Below, one piece after another: positions 1,336 through 61,352 of a stretch of 64,000 bases of DNA (within the stretch, counting starts at the first letter, position 1; every line of letters starts with the position of its first letter). The notes below the pieces were generated by a model, which saw only the letters and a list, made by a program, of their open reading frames with translations, did no database searches and was not told the origin of the DNA. Origin of the DNA: Ascidiella aspersa (taxonomy: Eukaryota); NCBI GenBank assembly GCA_963924565.1, contig OZ004611.1, positions 25,048,001 to 25,112,000 on the forward strand, given 5' to 3'. A program made the position numbers and the translations under genes.

Positions 1336-2209
1336 CGAATCTTGATTTGCTGTGTGCTTTAAATAATCCAAAATAATATTTAGTAAAAACAAATAAATAT
1401 ACTCAGCAGTTGGGTAACAGAAATTTCATTGTACAAGTTATTTTCTGCAAAAAAGGATAAACGTAATGGTTAAGACATAATCCCCTTTAAACTTCACTTA
1501 GTTCAAATAAATGTAAAAAAATTATATAAATAGCAGACAAAACTCTGAATCAATAGAATATTGCGACAAACATGATTGCCACATTGCACTACATTAGCTA
1601 TTTCTGTTCTGCTCGGCAGCGTACAGCGAAACTTAATTAAGGCTCAACAAACCCTTCCACAATCTTTGGCCACAGTTGTCATTCAAGAGAGCGCAAACAA
1701 AAAACGACAAACGACAGAATAACTATTACCGACGATAATTACCCGCTATTCAGCGCCCATTAGGCCCCGCCCGATCCTCTCCTGCCCTAAGACCTTGGCG
1801 CACACGTGTCTATGACGTCACAATTACATGGATGAGGCCTTCGCGATGCGCACACAGCGCCAGGAAACTTCTCGGCCGAAATCGTAGACGAATCAGCTGA
1901 AAAATCCCGTTTGCAAGTTGTGCTCGGGCCTCCTTGAAGCGGTCTGTTTCGGAAATGTACACGCGCACTATTGGCTGCCTTTTAAATAACCTTCCCGAGA
2001 GTGAGGTCACAATGGCGCCGCGATACGTTTCCTTTATTGCGTCACGCTGTGCGATATCGATGCAAACGCGAGCGGCCTGCCGACGTCCTCTTTGGAGATG
2101 ACTAAAAACTACTTCGAGAGCTGATTTCCGAAACCTCGTCCGATTACTTTTTGGAAGGATTTCCGACAAAACTAAAATTAGCATAGGAAGATGACTTAAC
2201 GTTACTCAC

Positions 2210-2870
2210 CAAGTCAAATATTTCCAACTAACTCCTACATATTGCTTGCCTCGCTACTAGCACTGCTCAGCAAGTAGCGTGAAGTGCCGACTGACCCGAC
2301 TCTTCTAAACCCATAATATTTATAAACATTGTCAAGTTTGTGACTCGCACACAATCCTTTCCAACTAATTGCAGTTCAACATAATCCTCTCCGCAATGCG
2401 TCCAAGCCACTTCAGCATAACCATTTAACCACTGTACAACAATACAATCAACTGCAAAGAGTCGTAAATCTGCTTGAATACTAATGCTGAAAACGTGCAA
2501 TCCCTGATTATACCTTTACTTTACAGCAATACAAACGACTCATTAGAGATTGTTTTGCAAAACAAACAACTGCAACTTTACTGTTACAAAGGGCACTTGA
2601 AAACGAAATACCAACTGCACAACAATACAGTCAACTGCAAAGAGTGGTAAATCTGCTTGAATACTTCTGCTGAAAACGTGCAACCCCTTATACCTTTACT
2701 TGGAAATACCAGCGACTCATTAACAACTTTTTTGCAACAAACCACGGTTGCAACATTACTGTAACCAGCAAGAGCACTTGAAAAAGAAACTGCCAGTAAG
2801 CAAGCAAACAACTGGCTGAAGCCAGTTAAGAGTCTAGAAAACCGCAGGGACCGAAGCAACAGCTTCAACA
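2210..2870 (-). other. Candidate non-coding 5' exon/leader of the minus-strand gene
   Basis: Consensus donor TTG|gtgagt at 2209-2204; G/T-rich sense strand; a GC-rich promoter-like block lies just upstream (2860-3060). The 5' boundary is a guess. Confidence 0.3.
2429..2790. repeat. Diverged tandem duplication, 2 x ~182 bp
   Basis: 2429-2610 and 2611-2790 share blocks tcaactgcaaagagt, gtaaatctgcttgaatact, tgctgaaaacgtgcaa, ttatacctttactt and gcacttgaaaa in the same order. Confidence 0.9.
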
Positions 2871-5800
2871 GCCTCGGATTTGTTTGCCTTTAGCGCCCAG
2901 CAATATAATCGAAGGCGGGCGAGCAGGCTGAGGTGCGACTTTTCGTGCCCGTGGCGCAATCGGCTCGAGGTACAAACGCTTCTTGGCGTCTCTCCAACGC
3001 TGGGGGCGAAATTAATTAGCAGAGGTTTTCTATTTGCGCGCCCGACAACTGACGATTCGCCGAAACATCAAGGTATGGGGAGATTTTTAGGAAAATAAAC
3101 TGCTGATTGATTTTTTAAACACACATTTTTCAAACTAAAAAAAAGCTTTGTTCAATTTGTTTCATATAAAAATAATCGTCTACTTATTTTCGATAAATTC
3201 AGTAAATAAAAAAGTGCTTGTTATTTAGTAGGTAGCAAAATTATTTGTTAATCTGTATATTAATCGGTAACGAGAAAAAACAACAATTGTAAATTAGAAA
3301 AAGTGGAAGTCTTTTAATTACATTCGTTTCAACTGAGGTGACTTGCACCTAAGCAATTACAGCTTTTCAACACCGTGGCACTACCAGTCGCTTTAAAAGG
3401 CGTAAATAGCCAAAACCACAAACTACTGGTGAAACATTAACCCAAACTCCGCGAGGGGGGCGCTCTTTTTACGTCACAATACTAACACGCGCGCGATTAC
3501 ATGGGAAATAAACTTCCAGGCGCATCCGGCGCCCGCCCTCCGCTATCTGATCGCGCCCGAGTAATTTACAAGCTGATACGAGGCCGGTCCGGTAAAAATA
3601 AAAGGCAACGTTCGACTTTCGACTTTCTTGTGTACTTAAGGTCACATTTGATAGATTCGGTCGTTTACCTTGTTACTGGCATGAGAAGAACTGAGTGCAT
3701 GTAAACCTTCAGAACCTAAAGGGATAACCTGAGCGGAATAATTGATAAACAACATCAGCAACAATAATTATTATTTTAACGACGAATACTAATTAAAATT
3801 TATAAGGGGTAATTAGTCACACGTTAAGAACCACGGCTCTACATATATGTTATCGCTTACCTTGCGTTAAAAGCCATATTTTAGTTCAAAAACTTGCAGA
3901 AACACAGCTGTTGTACAAAACGCCAATACTTTTTTTAATTTCTTTCTTTGAATAACGCTTTTCTAGTTTAATTTCGGCTGAAGTTCGCCTAAACGCAGTT
4001 TGAAGCGATTTAAATGCGAGTGATTTAATGCTTCTTTATTTGTACTGCCGTTTCCTATTCCCGTACGTTGGCGGATTAAGTCATGATCGTAGCGTCGCGA
4101 CCGACCGACTGATTCACAAAAAGTTTCCTGTTGACATATAAGCCCTATTTGCGTGGGATTCTCACCGGGGCTTGGGACTGGGGTTGAAGTTGTTCCCTGT
4201 ATAGTAGCCCCAAGTTAAAAAAACGTACGTGGTTGAGTTGAATTCCGCTTCAAAGCGATGGTGAAATCTTGAAATGTAAAGTTTGTTCGTTACCACTTCC
4301 GATTGCAACACAATGTAGCAAGTAATCGTTTTTGTTTTTTTTTGGTTAACATTATTTTTTGGGGGGGATTTTTGGTTAACATTAATTTACAAAAAGAAAC
4401 GGTTTAGAAAGTCGCAATTAAGTTGTTAAGTATTATTTCGCTATAAAATATTTCCGCTGAATTTATCAAAAACACATAAAACTACAAGTCAAACAAGTTC
4501 ATTCGATGCACCGGAGTCTCGCAGAGCCTGCCGGCAGACGACAAACATGCTCGACTTTAATTCGCCTAAATTGGCCGCAAAAAGCGCAAGAAGCCGCCTA
4601 ACCACGTTAAAGTGTCGGGACGTGTCAGCGCGAAAAGCTGGAATGTGACCTTGCAGTTTAAAGGCGGTAAACAGAGCAGCACCAGACTTCACGCCAAGCT
4701 CAACAAAATGACTGAAGACCACACACGGCCTATATAATGGCAACAGTGGTAGCCAGACAACAGTGTGCTCTGGGTGTTTTGACAAGCCGGCCATAAAAGT
4801 ACACACGTAAACGCCGGTAACGCCGGTTCAGGAATTCCTAACATTCGAAGAGGTTCTTCACTATTGCTAGCTTAGCACTCAGTAACGCGCACATATCCAA
4901 ACAAAGTAGGGTGACCGTAAAAACTACTTGTATCTGCTGCAAACAAAGTTGTAAACCGATGTTTCTCGAACAGGTGCCTGTTAACCTCATTAAGATTAAC
5001 TAACTGAAACTTACGAAGGTTAAACATCTTCTCATTGACTAAGAGCTTACCTGGTGAAGCTATCTCTAACACAGCTCTGCTTACAAAATAAAAACTAGCC
5101 AGTAACAGACAGAAATAATTGACGCTCAAATACACTATTTTGGAAAGTCAAGCCAACACCGCACACCATACTATAGAAAGTTTTTTTTTAGGCAAAATTT
5201 CTTTTCCCGATGTCAAATCACAGCCTTTACACGCAATCGCGACAAAGTTTCCGCGAAATGCCCAGAAAACTCGGGAACAAGTGCGAGCCTTGTGCGTGGG
5301 GCCGCTAATCACGTCGATGAATCAGCAACTCGACTCATCGCTGTTTTAGGTTTCAAACTAAGCGACGTAATTCGACACAGAATACGATTGTGACGCTTAC
5401 GAAATCCGTCAAGCCGCTTCGAGTTATTTTAATTCCAGCTGATTAAACACATTAACCTCCAAATCCAATCAAAGGCTAATATAACCGAACAAGTTTTAAA
5501 CGATTTTTAATTAGATTGACTATAATATTAATGAGAGAAGATCTTCATATTTAATCACATAAACCCAAGATTTGTAAAATAAAATATAGGTTAGTTGGCA
5601 ACACGTGGGTAATAACAATTTTTTTTTACGAAAGCGCAAAAATATTTACCTCCAGCGTTTTTACTAAACGTCAACTGCGTTTTTTCTTTACTTATTTAAC
5701 TAAACTATGAATGCGAAAGTTTCTCTTCTAAAAGTCTCGATGCAACCTCTCCCAATACAAACTTTTTACACTTTACTCGACAAATATATCTTTCGTCTTA

Positions 5801-8800
5801 GTTCACTCCCCAACTGTCATGCGGTTGACAAATGAAGAATAGTCAGGGCCTCGATGGAAGAGTTACAAGTTGCAATGCTCCAAATGCCCCCAAGGCACTG
5901 GTTTTGTTCGTATTCGTTCGGTACCAGTCAGCAAATAAGAAGGGATTTACGTCAATATACTTCGTAATTGGATTGGTTAATCGCCTTCATAATGATGGCA
6001 GGCGTAACGAATTGAACGCAAATATGTTTCAAAGGAGTGTCAATGTAAAGGCATTAGGGTTTGCTCAAGAGTGATATTTTAACACCGCTAAGTAACTTTC
6101 AGGCGGCATTTAGATACCGAAATAAATATAATTTCTACGGACTTTAATCAGTCAAAAGTGAAAGTCTTAAATCTGTTATTTTCATTGAAAAATTTGTGTG
6201 ACCTTCAAACACAGTCAACATACCGGTTTGAAAGATCGCAGTTTAGTTTTACACAATTAACTAGGTTTAATTCAAACATATAAAAATTAACTCGTTTCAT
6301 GAAAAGATTTAAAAATTGACTGGTTTTCTTGAAAATTCTCACGACTGGATAATGTCTTATCGCATCAACCTTGACAACTTTAAAGCAACCCGAGACAGTG
6401 TTTACTAACACGACCGAGAAACGATAACATTGCAACGTTTCGTGAGAAAAAATTCTTTCACTGTTTTATTTGAACCCCAGTATACTACCTAATGAGCTTG
6501 TTCTTAAGGCAAAGTAATTGCCCTGTATGACTTCGGTAGGATAAAAACACAGTATATAACCAACAAATGCATATCTACATCAATAGTCTATTTCTTTCCG
6601 ACAAACGATGTTATTGCAACAGACCGCTACAAATACCCCCTAGTGTGTATTTCTAGCTTAATACAGAAACAAATTGTTGTCGTAATACCCAGCCTTTCAA
6701 TTTGCTAAACCACTTGTTAAATCGTCTTTTTAGCACAGATATACGTCACGAAAAGCTTATGGTTTCCAGCAATGGTAGCGCAATTTCGACATGCTATCCA
6801 GTTACAACCTACGTCACTTTCTTCTGGCCGACAATAAAACAAATCGAAACATGATATTATTACGATAGCTCTACCAATTAGTTCTATTCTCGATTTTGCT
6901 GTGAATGGAGCCTGGGAAATTTTCGTTCCTTCGCTTGCACCACTTCTGAAAACAAACACGGCCGTCGTAAAGCAATCGAATCTCGCGACTTCTAAACCGC
7001 ACGTCTGACATGATACACGTTTCATCAAAACACGGCGCTCTTTAGTTGGACAAAGTGTCCCTACACAAAAGTCCCGTCGCGGGTTGCAATCGAGCAACGT
7101 AGGTCAGTAAAACAAGGGTTTGGTAAGGAGGTTTAAGCGCACTAAGCAGTACTCAACGTCGCCCGAAGCCCTTGGTTGATTCACGACCCCCGTTGGCTAG
7201 AAGTGTCATTCAACAGAGCAAAAGCAGAGAACAATGGGCTGCGGAGTGCGCGAGAGCTTTTATTTATTACGACATAGACGCGGGCTTAGCTTAAGCGGGA
7301 GGCACGTTGTTAGTTCATAACACTGTCCGGGATACAATAGGATTATCTGAGGTTACGTAGGGGCGTTTTTCGCCTCTGCTTGACAATTTTAAGATGAAGG
7401 ATCACACTGAATCCCGTGTTATTGATTATTTTCCAATAGATCGTTGCTATTGGTAGTGCCTTGTCGTTACAAAGGCTTAGGATTACTGACCATTTTTATA
7501 TTGTGATTAAATGAGGCTTACATATAACTGTAAAAACAAATATATAGCGCAATATTCTAAACTCGATTCACTTGATATCTGAAGTCAGTTTGGGTATTGA
7601 ATTGGCGCGAAAAATATTACCAAAGCCTCCTTTGACGTGAATTAGACAGAAAATGTACTTTCGACTGGCTAAGCTGTAAATCAATTTTAACTGAACTGAA
7701 AAGTACAAGTTGCCACACATAAGACTGACTCAATAAAAATGCCGAGCGCGTTACATCACATATAGTTACAATGCTGCAGGGCATTAAATACGGTTATGAT
7801 TACACAGTGCGGAGTACCTCTTGAGAGTATAGGCACCGCACAACGTTTGAATTGTGAGGCATCGAGCAATTGTTAAAGGTCAGATAACTCGTCTAATGTC
7901 GGATTATCGTCAAGTTAAAGCACCACAGATCGGTTATAACCACTTCTATTGAGACTTTATGTCGGTTTTCGTTATTCGACTAATCACAACGAACTAAAAG
8001 AAACTTGTAAAATACTACCTTTTCCAAAACTTTCTGTGATGAATTAAAATAAATTCGGTCCTTGGTAACTCTTGTTAATTAGATAATACAAATAACGGAT
8101 GAAAATATTTTCAATATCAAAGTCAGTGTTTTATTTTACTTATGTCTAACAAGGATCGCTAATCCTTTGATCGCAACCTCTCTTAAACATAATAAACGCC
8201 GCTTAGTCATATTCACGCACATGTCGTTCTAAACGCAAGTCACCGAATTAGACTTGACGACGCAGTGGAACAAATAGAGAGTTTCTCCCCACCTCACAAA
8301 CCACTCTATTTCCGATACAAAACAGATAGAGCACATCGTACCGAAGCGGATCATATCTGTCGCATCCGCATTGCCTTTTTCGCAAGGTAAATAAGGGCCG
8401 AGGGTTAACGACTTTCGAGTCCGTTGCTGTGCTGGTTCTGTGAATGGATCCTTTCATTAAATTTCTCGCAGGCAGCACGCGCTTGATTTTAGTACAAACA
8501 GGTTGCAAAACGAATCCGGATACACATCGAAGTTGTGATTTCACGTCTTGACAAAACCGCTTTCTGCAGAACGGACGAATTTAGTAAATGTTTACCGTTT
8601 TAACGCACGAAGGGCACGTAATTGAACTTTGATCGATTTTGACAATTATAGACTGCTTTGTAATTGTATTTTGGAGCTGGGTGTTTTCGTACTTATAAAA
8701 TTCCGTAGAGGTTTACACAAACTTTGTTACTTTTCAATGGTTTGGCATTGCAAATTCGACCAACGACCTAATACTACATTCTTAGTGCTGATCGGCTACA

Positions 8801-60308: not shown

Positions 60309-60528
60309 CATTGCTTCATGTTTTCCTAGACTTATAGGTAAGTTTTTTTTAGTCTACTCTGGAAGGGAAATTTAGGTTTCGTTGGGACAGTCTGTTAGTA
60401 CAAGCAACCTCATAGAAGGGGATCCAATACCATATAGTTTGTTCAATGAAACATTCACACATATGTGTGTTAATAACTGAGATCTAGCCCTTCGAAGCTG
60501 CTTTTTGACCAACGACTACGGCTTACGT

Positions 60529-60797
60529 ATAATTAGTACACCGAAAGCCATCGCAGACTCACCGAATCTGTTGATCTATGATGCAAGCAGATTGAGCAAG
60601 CATTGGCGCATGGTTGTTTCTCGACTCGTTCCCTTCTGAGCCTGCATAGCTCAGTTGGTAGAGCGACGGCCCCGGCTTGACCGGAGGTCGTGAGTTCGAA
60701 CCTCACTGCAGGCTAGTTGTTTTTCTAGTCTGCTCTGCGTGCATCATAGATCAACTGATTCGGTGAGTCAGCGATGGCTTTCGGTTTCTCTAATTAT
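60529..60797. mobile_element. 269-bp inverted-repeat-bounded element enclosing a tRNA-like gene
   Basis: Arms 60540-60585 and 60740-60785 are 44/46 complementary; outer ataattag / ctaattat; no long TSD (a TA or AT dinucleotide is possible). Confidence 0.8.
60640..60714 (+). ncRNA. tRNA-like Pol III unit with non-canonical anticodon arm (not a decoding tRNA)
   Basis: Perfect 7-bp acceptor stem GCCTGCA/TGCAGGC; D arm GCTC-AGTTGGTA-GAGC (A box); T arm GTGAG-TTCGAAC-CTCAC (B box); AGGTC variable loop; T5 run at 60720-60724. The anticodon arm is 19 nt instead of 17 and cannot form a 5-bp stem with a 7-nt loop. Confidence 0.8.
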
Positions 60798-60862
60798 TAA
60801 TATTTAAAATTTTTTTATAAAATTGTGAACATTGACTCTGCAAATACAAGTTGTGGTGTCAT

Positions 60863-61052
60863 GCTGGAGTGAACCGCTTTCGTTTACAGGTTCGGGTTCG
60901 TTTAAGGTTCATGTTCTTTTAAGTTATTCGGTTCAGTTCCGGTTCGGCTCCTTAAAATTTTACAAACACGGTTCAGTTTCCGTTGCGGGTCGGAAAAAAC
61001 TTGCCCAAAACCGGTTCATAAAGTTTCGGTTCGGTACCGGTTCGACTTCCTG
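60863..61052. repeat. (GGTTC)n-rich MITE-like remnant
   Basis: About ten (c)ggttc units, ending ggttcgacttcctg. Confidence 0.6.
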
Positions 61053-61352
61053 GGATCAATTCAATTTATTCAAAAAACCCTTCGGGTGAATTGCAAAACA
61101 ACTCTTCGGGAAAATAATTTCTCTGCTCAACAAAACATGTTTTAAAGCACTGGATATGAGTGTGGTATTATAAAAGTTCAAGGTCCCTGATTAGGAAATT
61201 GTTCTTAGTTTAGTTCGTTTGGATTGTCAAAGTTTGAATTGGCTTAGGTTTTTAGGGTATCGCAAAATTATTTTTTTGCAATTTTGCCCTCGAAGGCATC
61301 CCCTCGTTGCTCACACAGGATAGTGTAAAGTACGTCCACGTTTAATCCTCAT

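What the first reader, a model, noticed from the sequence alone, without database searches (positions are those of the whole stretch)
60529..60797. tRNA-like Pol III cassette enclosed by long inverted repeats: neither a standard SINE nor a standard MITE
Seen: a 75-nt cloverleaf with intact acceptor, D and T arms and A/B boxes, but a remodelled 19-nt anticodon arm (ACGGCCCCGGCTTGACCGG). It ends at a T5 run and sits in the loop between 46-52-bp inverted arms. Known: SINEs have the tRNA head at the 5' end, with a body and tail downstream. Here the terminator comes right after the cloverleaf and element sequence lies on both sides, so a Pol III transcript could not copy the whole element. MITEs do not normally keep an intact Pol III gene. 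Inference: a mobile unit that preserves a tRNA fold for a non-decoding use. Options are an RNase P/Z processing signal in a longer transcript, a small RNA, a TFIIIC-bound insulator, or part of the terminal repeat of a Penelope-like or tyrosine-recombinase element.
Basis: partly seen in the sequence, partly recalled or inferred. Interest (0 to 1): 0.85.

Follow-up and report, generated by a model that had tools for sequence, protein, structure and literature searches.

The report
tRNA-bearing Penelope-style retroelement, fold-back copy
The "tRNA gene between inverted repeats" is one rearranged copy of an abundant 345-base non-coding retroelement that carries a tRNA look-alike and inserts the way Penelope-like retrotransposons do. 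The inverted arms are a by-product of insertion, not the ends of a new kind of transposon.

Summary
There is a tRNA-like cloverleaf at 60640-60714 (Rfam tRNA 52 bits), a T5 run at 60720-60724, and 52-nt inverted arms that are 94% complementary.

The 269-bp stretch is not a mobile unit. It is the junction of two pieces of one insertion of a 345-bp repeat unit with about 2,950 first-look hits in this genome. One piece is inverted (60388-60591) and one is direct (60588-60798). Both arms are the same unit segment (u289-340) in opposite orientations.

Across 28 independent insertions:
- Half carry an inverted piece, with junctions at different positions.
- Insertions span 0.7-3.3 units, and most are flanked by 9-14+ bp target duplications.
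- 81% of outward-facing ends fall at two fixed sites, while 5' ends scatter.

True RT+GIY-YIG Penelope-like elements (PLEs) in this genome show the same two-armed structure. No hammerhead, no ORF and no autonomous partner was found.

- The tRNA body is identical (0 of 74 differences) between two subfamilies that differ by 12-27% elsewhere.
- A covarying 9-bp hairpin around the T5 run competes with the acceptor stem.

The scan had already found this family on other DNA of this genome, with at least four follow-ups reaching the same reading. Verdict: a new variant of a known kind; this locus is an ordinary, older copy.

The parts
60388..60534 (-). Inverted piece, distal part: unit positions u149 down to u1 (the 'tail' region of the unit). 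Its outer end at u149 overlaps by about 7 nt the start (u143) of the direct piece.
   Evidence: blastn against the unit gives 90.6% identity; 95.3% identity to the 345-bp consensus.
60535..60591 (-). Inverted piece, proximal part: u345 down to u289. It contains the left inverted-repeat arm (60540-60591).
   Evidence: 100% identical to the family consensus.
60588..60591 (.). Inner junction between the inverted and direct pieces, with 4-nt microhomology (CAGA).
   Evidence: The two blast segments overlap here; sequence read.
60588..60639 (+). Direct piece, leader u143-194 upstream of the tRNA-like module. It includes a 27-nt block that is conserved between subfamilies.
60640..60714 (+). tRNA-like module (u195-268 plus the discriminator base). 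A-box-like sequence at 60647-60658, B-box-like at 60692-60702. Non-decoding anticodon loop. This copy has a T>C change in the anticodon stem.
   Evidence: ARAGORN; Rfam tRNA 52 bits; folds; pair counts; 0 of 74 differences between the two subfamilies.
60708..60733 (+). 9-bp hairpin GCAGGCTAG[TTGTTTTT]CTAGTCTGC. Its 5' strand includes 6 nt of the acceptor 3' strand, and the T5 run (60720-60724) lies in its loop.
   Evidence: -14.4 kcal/mol with z -5.7. Kept in subfamily 2 by one compensatory pair and two wobble swaps.
60734..60785 (+). Right inverted-repeat arm, which is the 3' arm of the unit (u289-340). It contains the 7-bp hairpin at 60755-60771, which here carries a compensatory A-U to U-A change at 60756 and 60770.
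60786..60798 (+). Diverged 3' end of the direct piece (u341-345 plus about 6-7 nt of the next unit). No target-site duplication was found for this copy.
60799..61074 (.). Neighbouring unrelated repeat rich in CGGTTC motifs. It is not part of the element and marks the element's right boundary.
   Evidence: 80% identity to L012:175-419; direct repeats D1.

Best explanation
Window 60388-60798 is one older, inactive insertion of an abundant non-coding retroelement family. The family unit is 345 bp, in the order tail, leader, tRNA-like module, T5 hairpin and 3' arm.

The family spreads through an RNA copy by target-primed reverse transcription of the kind that Penelope-like elements (PLEs) use. cDNA synthesis starts at one of two preferred internal sites and often runs over more than one unit. 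It stops at variable 5' points, and in half of the insertions a second piece is laid down in the opposite direction.

In this copy a contiguous template of about 1.2 units (u289 through u345, then on to the next u345) was split at u143-149. Its 5' part was fixed in inverted orientation. That places the same segment, u289-340, on both sides of the leader, tRNA-like module and T5 run, and this is the 'inverted repeat with a cloverleaf in the loop'.

The tRNA-like module is a constrained part of the element, not a passenger. Its most likely role is an internal Pol III transcription unit that also makes a tRNA-shaped small RNA. The adjoining hairpin would mask the acceptor stem in longer template RNAs.

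What is shown: the family, its insertion architecture, the structure of this copy, the conservation of the tRNA body, and the predicted hairpin. What is inferred: the enzyme that moves it, the polymerase that transcribes it, and the role of the tRNA fold.
For: Family and copy number
- 2,953 first-look candidates in the own genome, and 148 matches among the 40 scored.
- Tandem period of 345 bp.
- A cloverleaf is found in every locus that was checked.
- The sampled copies are 89-99.6% identical to a 345-bp consensus, most of them 96% or more.

Insertion architecture
- 28 independent composites: 14 direct and 14 with an inverted piece, spanning 0.73-3.27 units.
- Of 42 outward-facing 3'-type ends, 21 lie at u340-345 and 13 at u87-100. 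The 14 outer 5' ends scatter from u1 to u224.
- Target-site duplications flank whole composites. The best flank match is 12 nt or more in about 16 of 29, with a control median of 7.

This copy
- The same few-nt overlap signature is seen in L006 and L015.

Penelope-like elements in the same genome
- RT plus C-terminal GIY-YIG elements are present.
- They show the same head-to-head, 5'-truncated structure. In L064, 4631-5073 is inverted against 5065-5905.
- PMC8557442 lists 5' truncation, partial tandems and an adjacent inverted 5'-truncated copy as hallmarks of these elements. It also describes non-autonomous derivatives that give multicopy head-to-tail insertions.

Constraint on the tRNA module
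- 0 of 74 differences in the tRNA body between subfamily 1 and subfamily 2, against about 27% in the tail, 17% in the middle, 12% in the leader and 5% in the arm.

Hairpin
-.
Against: - No autonomous element sharing the 3' arm was found. Two RT+GIY-YIG families were sampled, and their 3' regions show no similarity to the unit.
- The Penelope-like assignment therefore rests on insertion architecture alone.
- This copy has no detectable target duplication.
- The RNA-seq shows only low, two-strand coverage. 88% of laid reads run on into unlike sequence, and there are no start or stop pile-ups. There is thus no evidence for a transcript of its own, and short RNAs were not assayable.
- The T5 run directly after the module should stop Pol III before the 3' arm.
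- Many copies begin far upstream of any Pol III start, so Pol III cannot simply make the template.
- The sample of loci is small and biased toward sequences resembling the query.
- Covariation rests on one subfamily split and one single-copy change.
Confidence: 0.75

Rival explanations
1. A tRNA-derived SINE mobilised by a LINE, with the inverted pieces produced by L1-type twin priming.
For: - Variable 5' truncation, 9-14+ bp target duplications and fixed 3' ends.
- Three composites (the window copy, L006, L015) have the inversion-with-small-overlap signature that is classic for twin priming. That comparison rests on my own knowledge of L1 biology.
Against: - There is no poly(A) or microsatellite tail.
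- The tRNA module is not at the 5' end.
- Insertions of up to 3.3 head-to-tail units lie inside one target duplication.
- In 11 of 14 inverted composites the second arm also ends at a canonical 3' site, which is the Penelope-like pattern (PMC8557442).
- No LINE partner was looked for or found.
Confidence: 0.12
2. A retrozyme-like element in which host tRNA enzymes take the place of the hammerhead ribozyme. In this reading RNase P, RNase Z or the tRNA splicing machinery cut multimeric transcripts to unit length. The products, possibly circular, are then copied by rolling-circle reverse transcription.
For: - Unit size, GC content (46%) and tandem organisation match metazoan non-LTR retrozymes (PMC7229834).
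- Multi-unit insertions have scattered 5' ends and two alternative priming sites per unit.
- No ribozyme is present.
- The whole unit RNA is unusually structured, with z -3.9.
Against: - None of 42 3' ends lies at u194 and only one lies at u273.
- None of 43 5' ends lies at u195 or u270, so tRNA-processing sites do not define the ends of copies.
- RNase P and RNase Z leave ends that the RtcB ligase does not join (my own knowledge).
- Circles cannot be told apart from genomic tandems with the reads available.
Confidence: 0.08
3. A DNA-level fold-back or MITE-like transposon bounded by terminal inverted repeats that happens to carry a Pol III gene.
For: 52-nt arms, 94% complementary, enclosing the cloverleaf.
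Against: - Most copies match only query positions 60-257 or 60-269 and so lack the left arm.
- Arm length (33-164 bp) and junction positions differ between loci.
- Element sequence continues 150 bp beyond the left arm.
- Target duplications are variable in length.
Confidence: 0.02
4. A chance tRNA pseudogene that landed inside an unrelated repeat.
For: The module comes with a leader and a T-run, like a genomic tRNA gene.
Against: - It is present in every unit of every copy examined.
- It is the most conserved part of the element between subfamilies.
Confidence: 0.02

Closest known systems
Non-autonomous derivatives of Penelope-like elements, for example the Chlamys-dependent MRC1 of Chlamydomonas (PMC8557442)
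   Same: Both are non-coding and frequently 5'-truncated. Both give partial tandem or multicopy head-to-tail insertions, an inverted 5'-truncated piece at the upstream end, and variable target duplications. Hammerhead-less lineages (Naiad/Chlamys) are known.
   Different: No 3' similarity to an autonomous element has been shown here. This family carries a complete tRNA-like Pol III-type module in the middle of the unit, which that paper does not describe.
Metazoan non-LTR retrozymes (PMC7229834; bioRxiv 10.64898/2026.07.22.740005)
   Same: Both are roughly 150-450-bp non-coding units of low GC content that occur as monomers up to multimers. Both have target duplications longer than 4 bp. A Penelope-like origin is proposed for retrozymes.
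   Different: The defining type I hammerhead is absent: Rfam finds none at E up to 10, and there is no CUGANGA core on either strand. No circular RNA has been shown.
Sm-alpha / Sj-alpha SINE-like retroposons of Schistosoma (PMC2770079, citing Ferbeyre 1998 and Laha 2000)
   Same: Both are roughly 335-bp units found dispersed and in tandem. Thousands of Sm-alpha copies are called as tRNA (Gln-TTG) genes by tRNA finders.
   Different: Sm-alpha also carries an active hammerhead, which this family lacks. There is no sequence relationship, and the host phylum differs.
Classical tRNA-derived SINEs
   Same: Both have tRNA-derived A-box and B-box sequences, are non-coding, have high copy number and carry target duplications.
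   Different: Here the tRNA part is not at the 5' end, and a T5 run follows it directly. There is no LINE-type or A-rich tail. Copies start upstream of any Pol III start and can span several units.
L1 twin-priming inversions (my own knowledge: Ostertag and Kazazian 2001)
   Same: In this copy, a contiguous template is split with its 5' part inverted, and there is a few-nt overlap at the break.
   Different: Most other inverted composites of this family end at a canonical 3' site on both sides, which is the Penelope-like pattern rather than the L1 pattern.

Membership tests
tRNA (Rfam RF00005), decoding tRNA gene | Cloverleaf with acceptor, D, anticodon and T arms, scoring above the gathering threshold | tested here: met
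   52.1 bits against a threshold of 29. ARAGORN calls it. 94.6% of cells pair across 8 copies. The consensus-like 75-nt RNA folds as a cloverleaf.
tRNA (Rfam RF00005), decoding tRNA gene | Canonical 7-nt anticodon loop with U33 and standard spacing, giving a usable anticodon and identity elements | tested here: not met
   The loop is CCGGCTT, with C at position 33. ARAGORN places the anticodon at position 36, so there are two extra bases. Pair 3:70 is C:G, not the G:U expected for Ala (sequence; identity rule from my own knowledge).
tRNA-derived SINE | Internal Pol III promoter (A and B boxes) | tested here: met
   A-box-like sequence at 60647-60658 and B-box-like at 60692-60702, by sequence only. 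Transcription was not tested.
tRNA-derived SINE | tRNA head at the 5' end of full-length copies, with a body and a LINE-related or A-rich tail downstream | tested here: not met
   5' ends scatter from u1 to u224, upstream of the module at u195. A T5 run follows the module. There is no A-rich or simple-repeat tail.
MITE / fold-back DNA transposon | Terminal inverted repeats at the ends of all copies and a target duplication of fixed length | tested here: not met
   Most copies lack the second arm. Arms and junctions vary between loci. Target duplications vary in length.
Penelope-like element, non-autonomous derivative | 5' truncation, partial or multicopy tandems, and an adjacent inverted 5'-truncated copy | tested here: met
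   The same architecture is seen in this genome's RT+GIY-YIG elements. The criteria come from PMC8557442.
Penelope-like element, non-autonomous derivative | 3'-end similarity to an autonomous RT+GIY-YIG element of the same genome | tested here: inconclusive
   No similarity was found to 30 GIY-YIG loci covering two RT+GIY-YIG families.
Penelope-like element, non-autonomous derivative | Hammerhead ribozyme in the repeat (typical of the Penelope, Neptune and Nematis clades; absent in Naiad and Chlamys) | tested here: not met
   Rfam finds none at E up to 10 on a tandem array. No CUGANGA core is present on either strand. The genome's own family 'A' does have one, at about L061:6795-6830.
Metazoan non-LTR retrozyme | Type I hammerhead in each unit | tested here: not met
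Metazoan non-LTR retrozyme | Expression as unit-length circular RNA | not testable with these tools
   Only poly(A)-type RNA-seq was available, and circle joints cannot be told apart from genomic tandems.

The most novel reading that the evidence does not exclude
The tRNA-like module and the covarying T5 hairpin together form a two-state RNA device that stands in for the hammerhead ribozyme of Penelope-type elements and retrozymes.

Transcripts that end at the T5 run fold as a tRNA and are handled by RNase P, RNase Z and the CCA-adding enzyme, giving an abundant tRNA-shaped small RNA. Longer transcripts pair the acceptor 3' strand with the sequence beyond the T5 run. They lose the acceptor stem and so escape tRNA processing, surviving as templates for reverse transcription. 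Alternatively, they are cut to unit length in a controlled fraction.
Probability: 0.15. Interest if true: 0.8.

Novelty: new variant of a known kind. Interest (0 to 1): 0.45.

Why it matters
What hammerhead ribozymes do for Penelope-like elements and retrozymes is still unknown. A young, abundant family that inserts in the same way but carries a strictly conserved tRNA fold instead offers a natural comparison. It can help show what such elements need from a structured RNA module: a promoter, end formation, RT recognition or protection.

It also matters in practice. Thousands of these units will be called as tRNA-Ala genes or pseudogenes, and their two-armed insertions will be called MITEs or fold-back elements by annotation pipelines.

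Tried and rejected
1. Hammerhead or any other Rfam ribozyme. None was found in the window region at E up to 1 or on a tandem array at E up to 10. No CUGANGA core is present on either strand.
2. A coding unit. Although 345 is a multiple of 3, all six frames of a trimer are full of stops, and the longest open stretch is 69 codons.
3. Spliced leader at the 5' ends, a lead from earlier scan notes. That is chance level, with 11 such hits in 308 kb.
4. An autonomous partner among 30 GIY-YIG loci. There is no tail similarity. The two loci with unit sequence nearby (L036/L061 and L039/L063) hold separate unit insertions; the L061 one has its own target duplication. L032 turned out to be bacterial UvrC.
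5. A target duplication for the window copy. None was found above control level.
6. Ends defined by RNase P or RNase Z. These were not seen.
7. Relatives in other organisms. Two metagenome pattern scans gave 0 hits, and earlier-findings look-ups by sequence were blank.
8. Clustering of 5' ends at the foot of the T5 hairpin. Six of 43 fall in u273-292, where 2.5 are expected (P about 0.04). The test was post hoc on a biased sample and is too weak to use.
9. More genomic copies or longer flanks.

Full report
**1. Observation**

The described features are all present.
- ARAGORN finds a single tRNA in the window, at 60639-60715 on the plus strand.
- Rfam's tRNA model matches 60640-60714 at 52.1 bits, E 6e-10.
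- A T5 run lies at 60720-60724.
- Arms 60540-60591 and 60734-60785 are 52 nt long and 94% complementary.

**2. It is a family, and the family unit is not the 269-bp cassette**

- The 269 bp give 2,953 first-look candidates in the window's own 308-Mb genome.
- Most scored copies match only query positions 60-257 or 60-269. They have the leader, the tRNA-like module and the right arm, but no left arm.
- The left arm matches the right arms of other copies in reverse.
- Many hits lie 345 bp apart. Tandem Repeats Finder gives a 345-bp period with 3.3 copies in L028.
- ARAGORN finds the cloverleaf in every one of the 28 loci checked, once per unit.
- A majority consensus of 42 copies is 345 bp long with 46% GC. 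The sampled copies are 89-99.6% identical to it, most of them 96% or more.
- In consensus coordinates the unit is laid out as follows:

| Part | Unit positions |
|---|---|
| Tail | u1-98 |
| Middle and leader | u99-194 |
| tRNA body | u195-268 |
| Discriminator base | u269 |
| T5 run | u275-279 |
| 3' arm | u289-345 |

**3. How copies are built**

Across 28 independent composites, after excluding segmental duplicates:
- 14 are direct and 14 contain an inverted piece. Sizes run from 0.73 to 3.27 units.
- Whole composites, including multi-unit arrays and two-armed ones, are flanked by target-site duplications. Examples are L005, L010, L016, L018, L022, L023, L025, L029 and L030.
- The best flank match is 12 nt or more in about 16 of 29 composites, against a control median of 7.
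- Of 42 outward-facing 3'-type ends, 21 lie at u340-345 (...GGCTTTCGGTGT(ACT)) and 13 at u87-100 (...GTTTCATTGAATA(A)).
- The 14 outer 5' ends scatter from u1 to u224.
- Each preferred end lies about 16-20 nt downstream of a hairpin. One hairpin is CACACATATGTGTG and the other is CAGATTCGGTGAGTCTG. Both ends follow a similar ATG..TTTC..TG motif. This is my reading of the consensus.
- There is no poly(A) or simple-repeat tail, no ORF and no hammerhead core.

Fixed 3' ends, variable 5' truncation and variable target duplications together indicate target-primed reverse transcription.

Multi-unit insertions, and inverted pieces that usually also end at a canonical 3' site, are what PMC8557442 describes for Penelope-like elements (PLEs) and their non-autonomous derivatives.

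**4. The window copy**

Three blast segments describe it.

| Window position | Strand | Unit positions |
|---|---|---|
| 60388-60534 | minus | u149 down to u1 |
| 60535-60591 | minus | u345 down to u289 |
| 60588-60789 | plus | u143 to u345, continuing degenerately to about 60798 |

- Read as a template, this is one contiguous stretch of about 1.2 units, from u289 through u345 and on to the next u345.
- It was split at u143-149 and its 5' part was inverted.
- The two pieces meet at a 4-nt microhomology at 60588-60591. About 7 nt (u143-149) are present at both the outer end of the inverted piece and the start of the direct piece.
- L006 and L015 show the same signature.
- Both 'arms' are therefore u289-340 of successive units, and the 'loop' is u143-288 of the direct piece.
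- The left arm is identical to the consensus. All three arm mismatches lie in the right arm.
- The direct piece is 93% identical to the consensus and the distal inverted part 95% (the arm segment is identical), so this copy is older than most of those sampled.
- No target duplication is detectable.
- The right end abuts another repeat, 60799-61074, which is 80% identical to L012:175-419.

**5. Penelope-like elements in the same genome**

- Pfam GIY-YIG gives 211 candidates.
- ORFs from two families carry RT plus a C-terminal GIY-YIG domain.
- Family 'A' has a canonical hammerhead (CTGATGA...GAAA at about L061:6795-6830). Its copies are 5'-truncated and head-to-head. In L064, 4631-5073 is inverted against 5065-5905.
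- Neither family shares its 3' region with the unit, so the partner is not identified.
- No more genomic DNA could be cut out.

**6. What is constrained**

A second subfamily, with a unit of about 353 bp (L061, L063), was compared with the subfamily 1 consensus.

| Region | Differences between subfamilies |
|---|---|
| Tail | about 27% |
| Middle | 17% |
| Leader | 12% |
| 3' arm | about 5% |
| tRNA body | 0 of 74 |

- At the 12% rate of the adjacent leader, 74 unchanged positions have a probability of about 1e-4. This is my own calculation.
- The differences begin within 6 nt upstream of the tRNA body and 1 nt downstream of it, so a recent exchange of the module is unlikely.
- The module is therefore selected at the level of the active elements.

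**7. The T5 hairpin**

- Directly after the tRNA body, GCAGGCTAG[TTGTTTTT]CTAGTCTGC (window 60708-60733) forms a 9-bp hairpin. It uses 6 nt of the acceptor 3' strand and holds the T5 run in its loop.
- Folded alone it gives -14.4 kcal/mol with z -5.7.
- Subfamily 2 keeps it through one compensatory pair (U-A to C-G) and two G-C/G-U swaps.
- The 75-nt RNA folds as a cloverleaf (-32.8 kcal/mol).
- In RNAs that run 23 nt further, and in the whole 345-nt unit, the minimum-energy fold forms this hairpin instead of the acceptor stem, in both subfamilies.
- The whole unit RNA is unusually structured, with z -3.9.
- These are predictions only. Covariation support is modest, with a score of 0.21 against 0.157 for shuffles and 7 of 500 shuffles reaching it, on 8 related rows.

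**8. RNA evidence**

- One RNA-seq run of the likely source species covers the unit thinly and equally on both strands, in proportion to DNA copy number.
- 88% of laid reads run on into unlike sequence, and there are no start or stop pile-ups.
- This looks like passive read-through. Short Pol III products would not be captured by this library.
- Family words occur in runs under four organism labels, with shares from 0.07 to 0.49.

**9. Mechanism**

Shown:
- A retroelement family whose insertion structure matches that of Penelope-like elements.
- The inverted repeat as a by-product of an inverted 5' piece.
- The tRNA body and 3' arm as the conserved parts of the unit.

Inferred:
- Mobilisation by an RT+GIY-YIG enzyme. 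I put this at about 0.65, against about 0.15-0.2 for a LINE.
- The tRNA module as an internal Pol III unit or tRNA-shaped RNA, with the hairpin protecting longer templates. This is the best guess, at no more than about 0.4.

Against a simple SINE model:
- The T5 run sits directly after the module.
- Copies start far upstream of the module.

Against a processing-signal model:
- The ends of copies do not coincide with RNase P or RNase Z sites.

**10. Known relatives**

- The closest described things are non-autonomous derivatives of Penelope-like elements (PMC8557442) and metazoan non-LTR retrozymes (PMC7229834; bioRxiv 10.64898/2026.07.22.740005).
- Schistosome Sm-alpha is also close. More than 2,300 of its copies are called tRNA-Gln by tRNAscan-SE, and it also carries a hammerhead (PMC2770079).
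- I found no description of a hammerhead-less unit of this type carrying a tRNA-like module. The library searched is incomplete, and Repbase and Dfam could not be checked.

**11. Earlier work in this scan**

- The same family was already followed up at least four times on other DNA of this genome, with the same reading.
- My analysis was done before reading those notes and agrees with them.
- As far as those short notes show, three points are added here: the subfamily comparison, the acceptor-masking hairpin, and the dissection of this copy.

Noticed in passing
window 60756 and 60770: The two arm mismatches A>T (u311) and T>A (u325) turn an A-U pair of the 7-bp arm hairpin into U-A. This double change is unique among the 43 sampled copies with sequence at these positions. 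It may be chance in a dead copy (roughly 0.02-0.1, post hoc) or a minor master lineage. Another finding of the scan (s1-802067) addresses it.
   Followed up: partly
window 60799-61074: An unrelated repeat rich in CGGTTC motifs starts exactly where the element ends. It is 80% identical to L012:175-419. Its type was not determined.
   Followed up: partly
L032 (G000:C11:2088-5303): The ORF at 1438-3147 is a bacterial-type UvrC (GIY-YIG plus UvrC RNase H domains, E 5e-49). Contig C11 of the assembly is probably bacterial, either a symbiont or a contaminant.
   Followed up: no
L046, L047, L051, L048 (G000:C2:30627252-30640808): RT+GIY-YIG elements of a second Penelope-like family (RT shown for family member L056) lie head to tail with an exact 3,422-bp spacing, in at least four units.
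   Followed up: no
L016, L026, L027 (G000:C2, 6.42-6.59 Mb): The same composite insertion with the same flanks occurs three times within 170 kb, once in the opposite orientation. This is a segmental duplication carrying the element.
   Followed up: no
L010:1736-1775 and L014:1840-1880: These composites contain a third short piece joined at the repeated motif AGTCTGC, which occurs at u282-288 and u321-327. This suggests template switching at that motif during insertion.
   Followed up: partly
L013:2385-2872: An old, decayed relative of the unit (70-82% identity) lacks about 34 nt between the T-run and the arm hairpin. It therefore lacks the 9-bp T5 hairpin. Its anticodon loop reads AGTATGA, a variant also seen in RNA and DNA reads (GGTATGACC).
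   Followed up: no
G000:C5:25192690-25192963: A second copy that matches the whole inverted-repeat-containing query (positions 1-257, 87%) lies only 84 kb from this locus on the same chromosome. It could be a local duplication or an independent insertion, and it could not be fetched.
   Followed up: no
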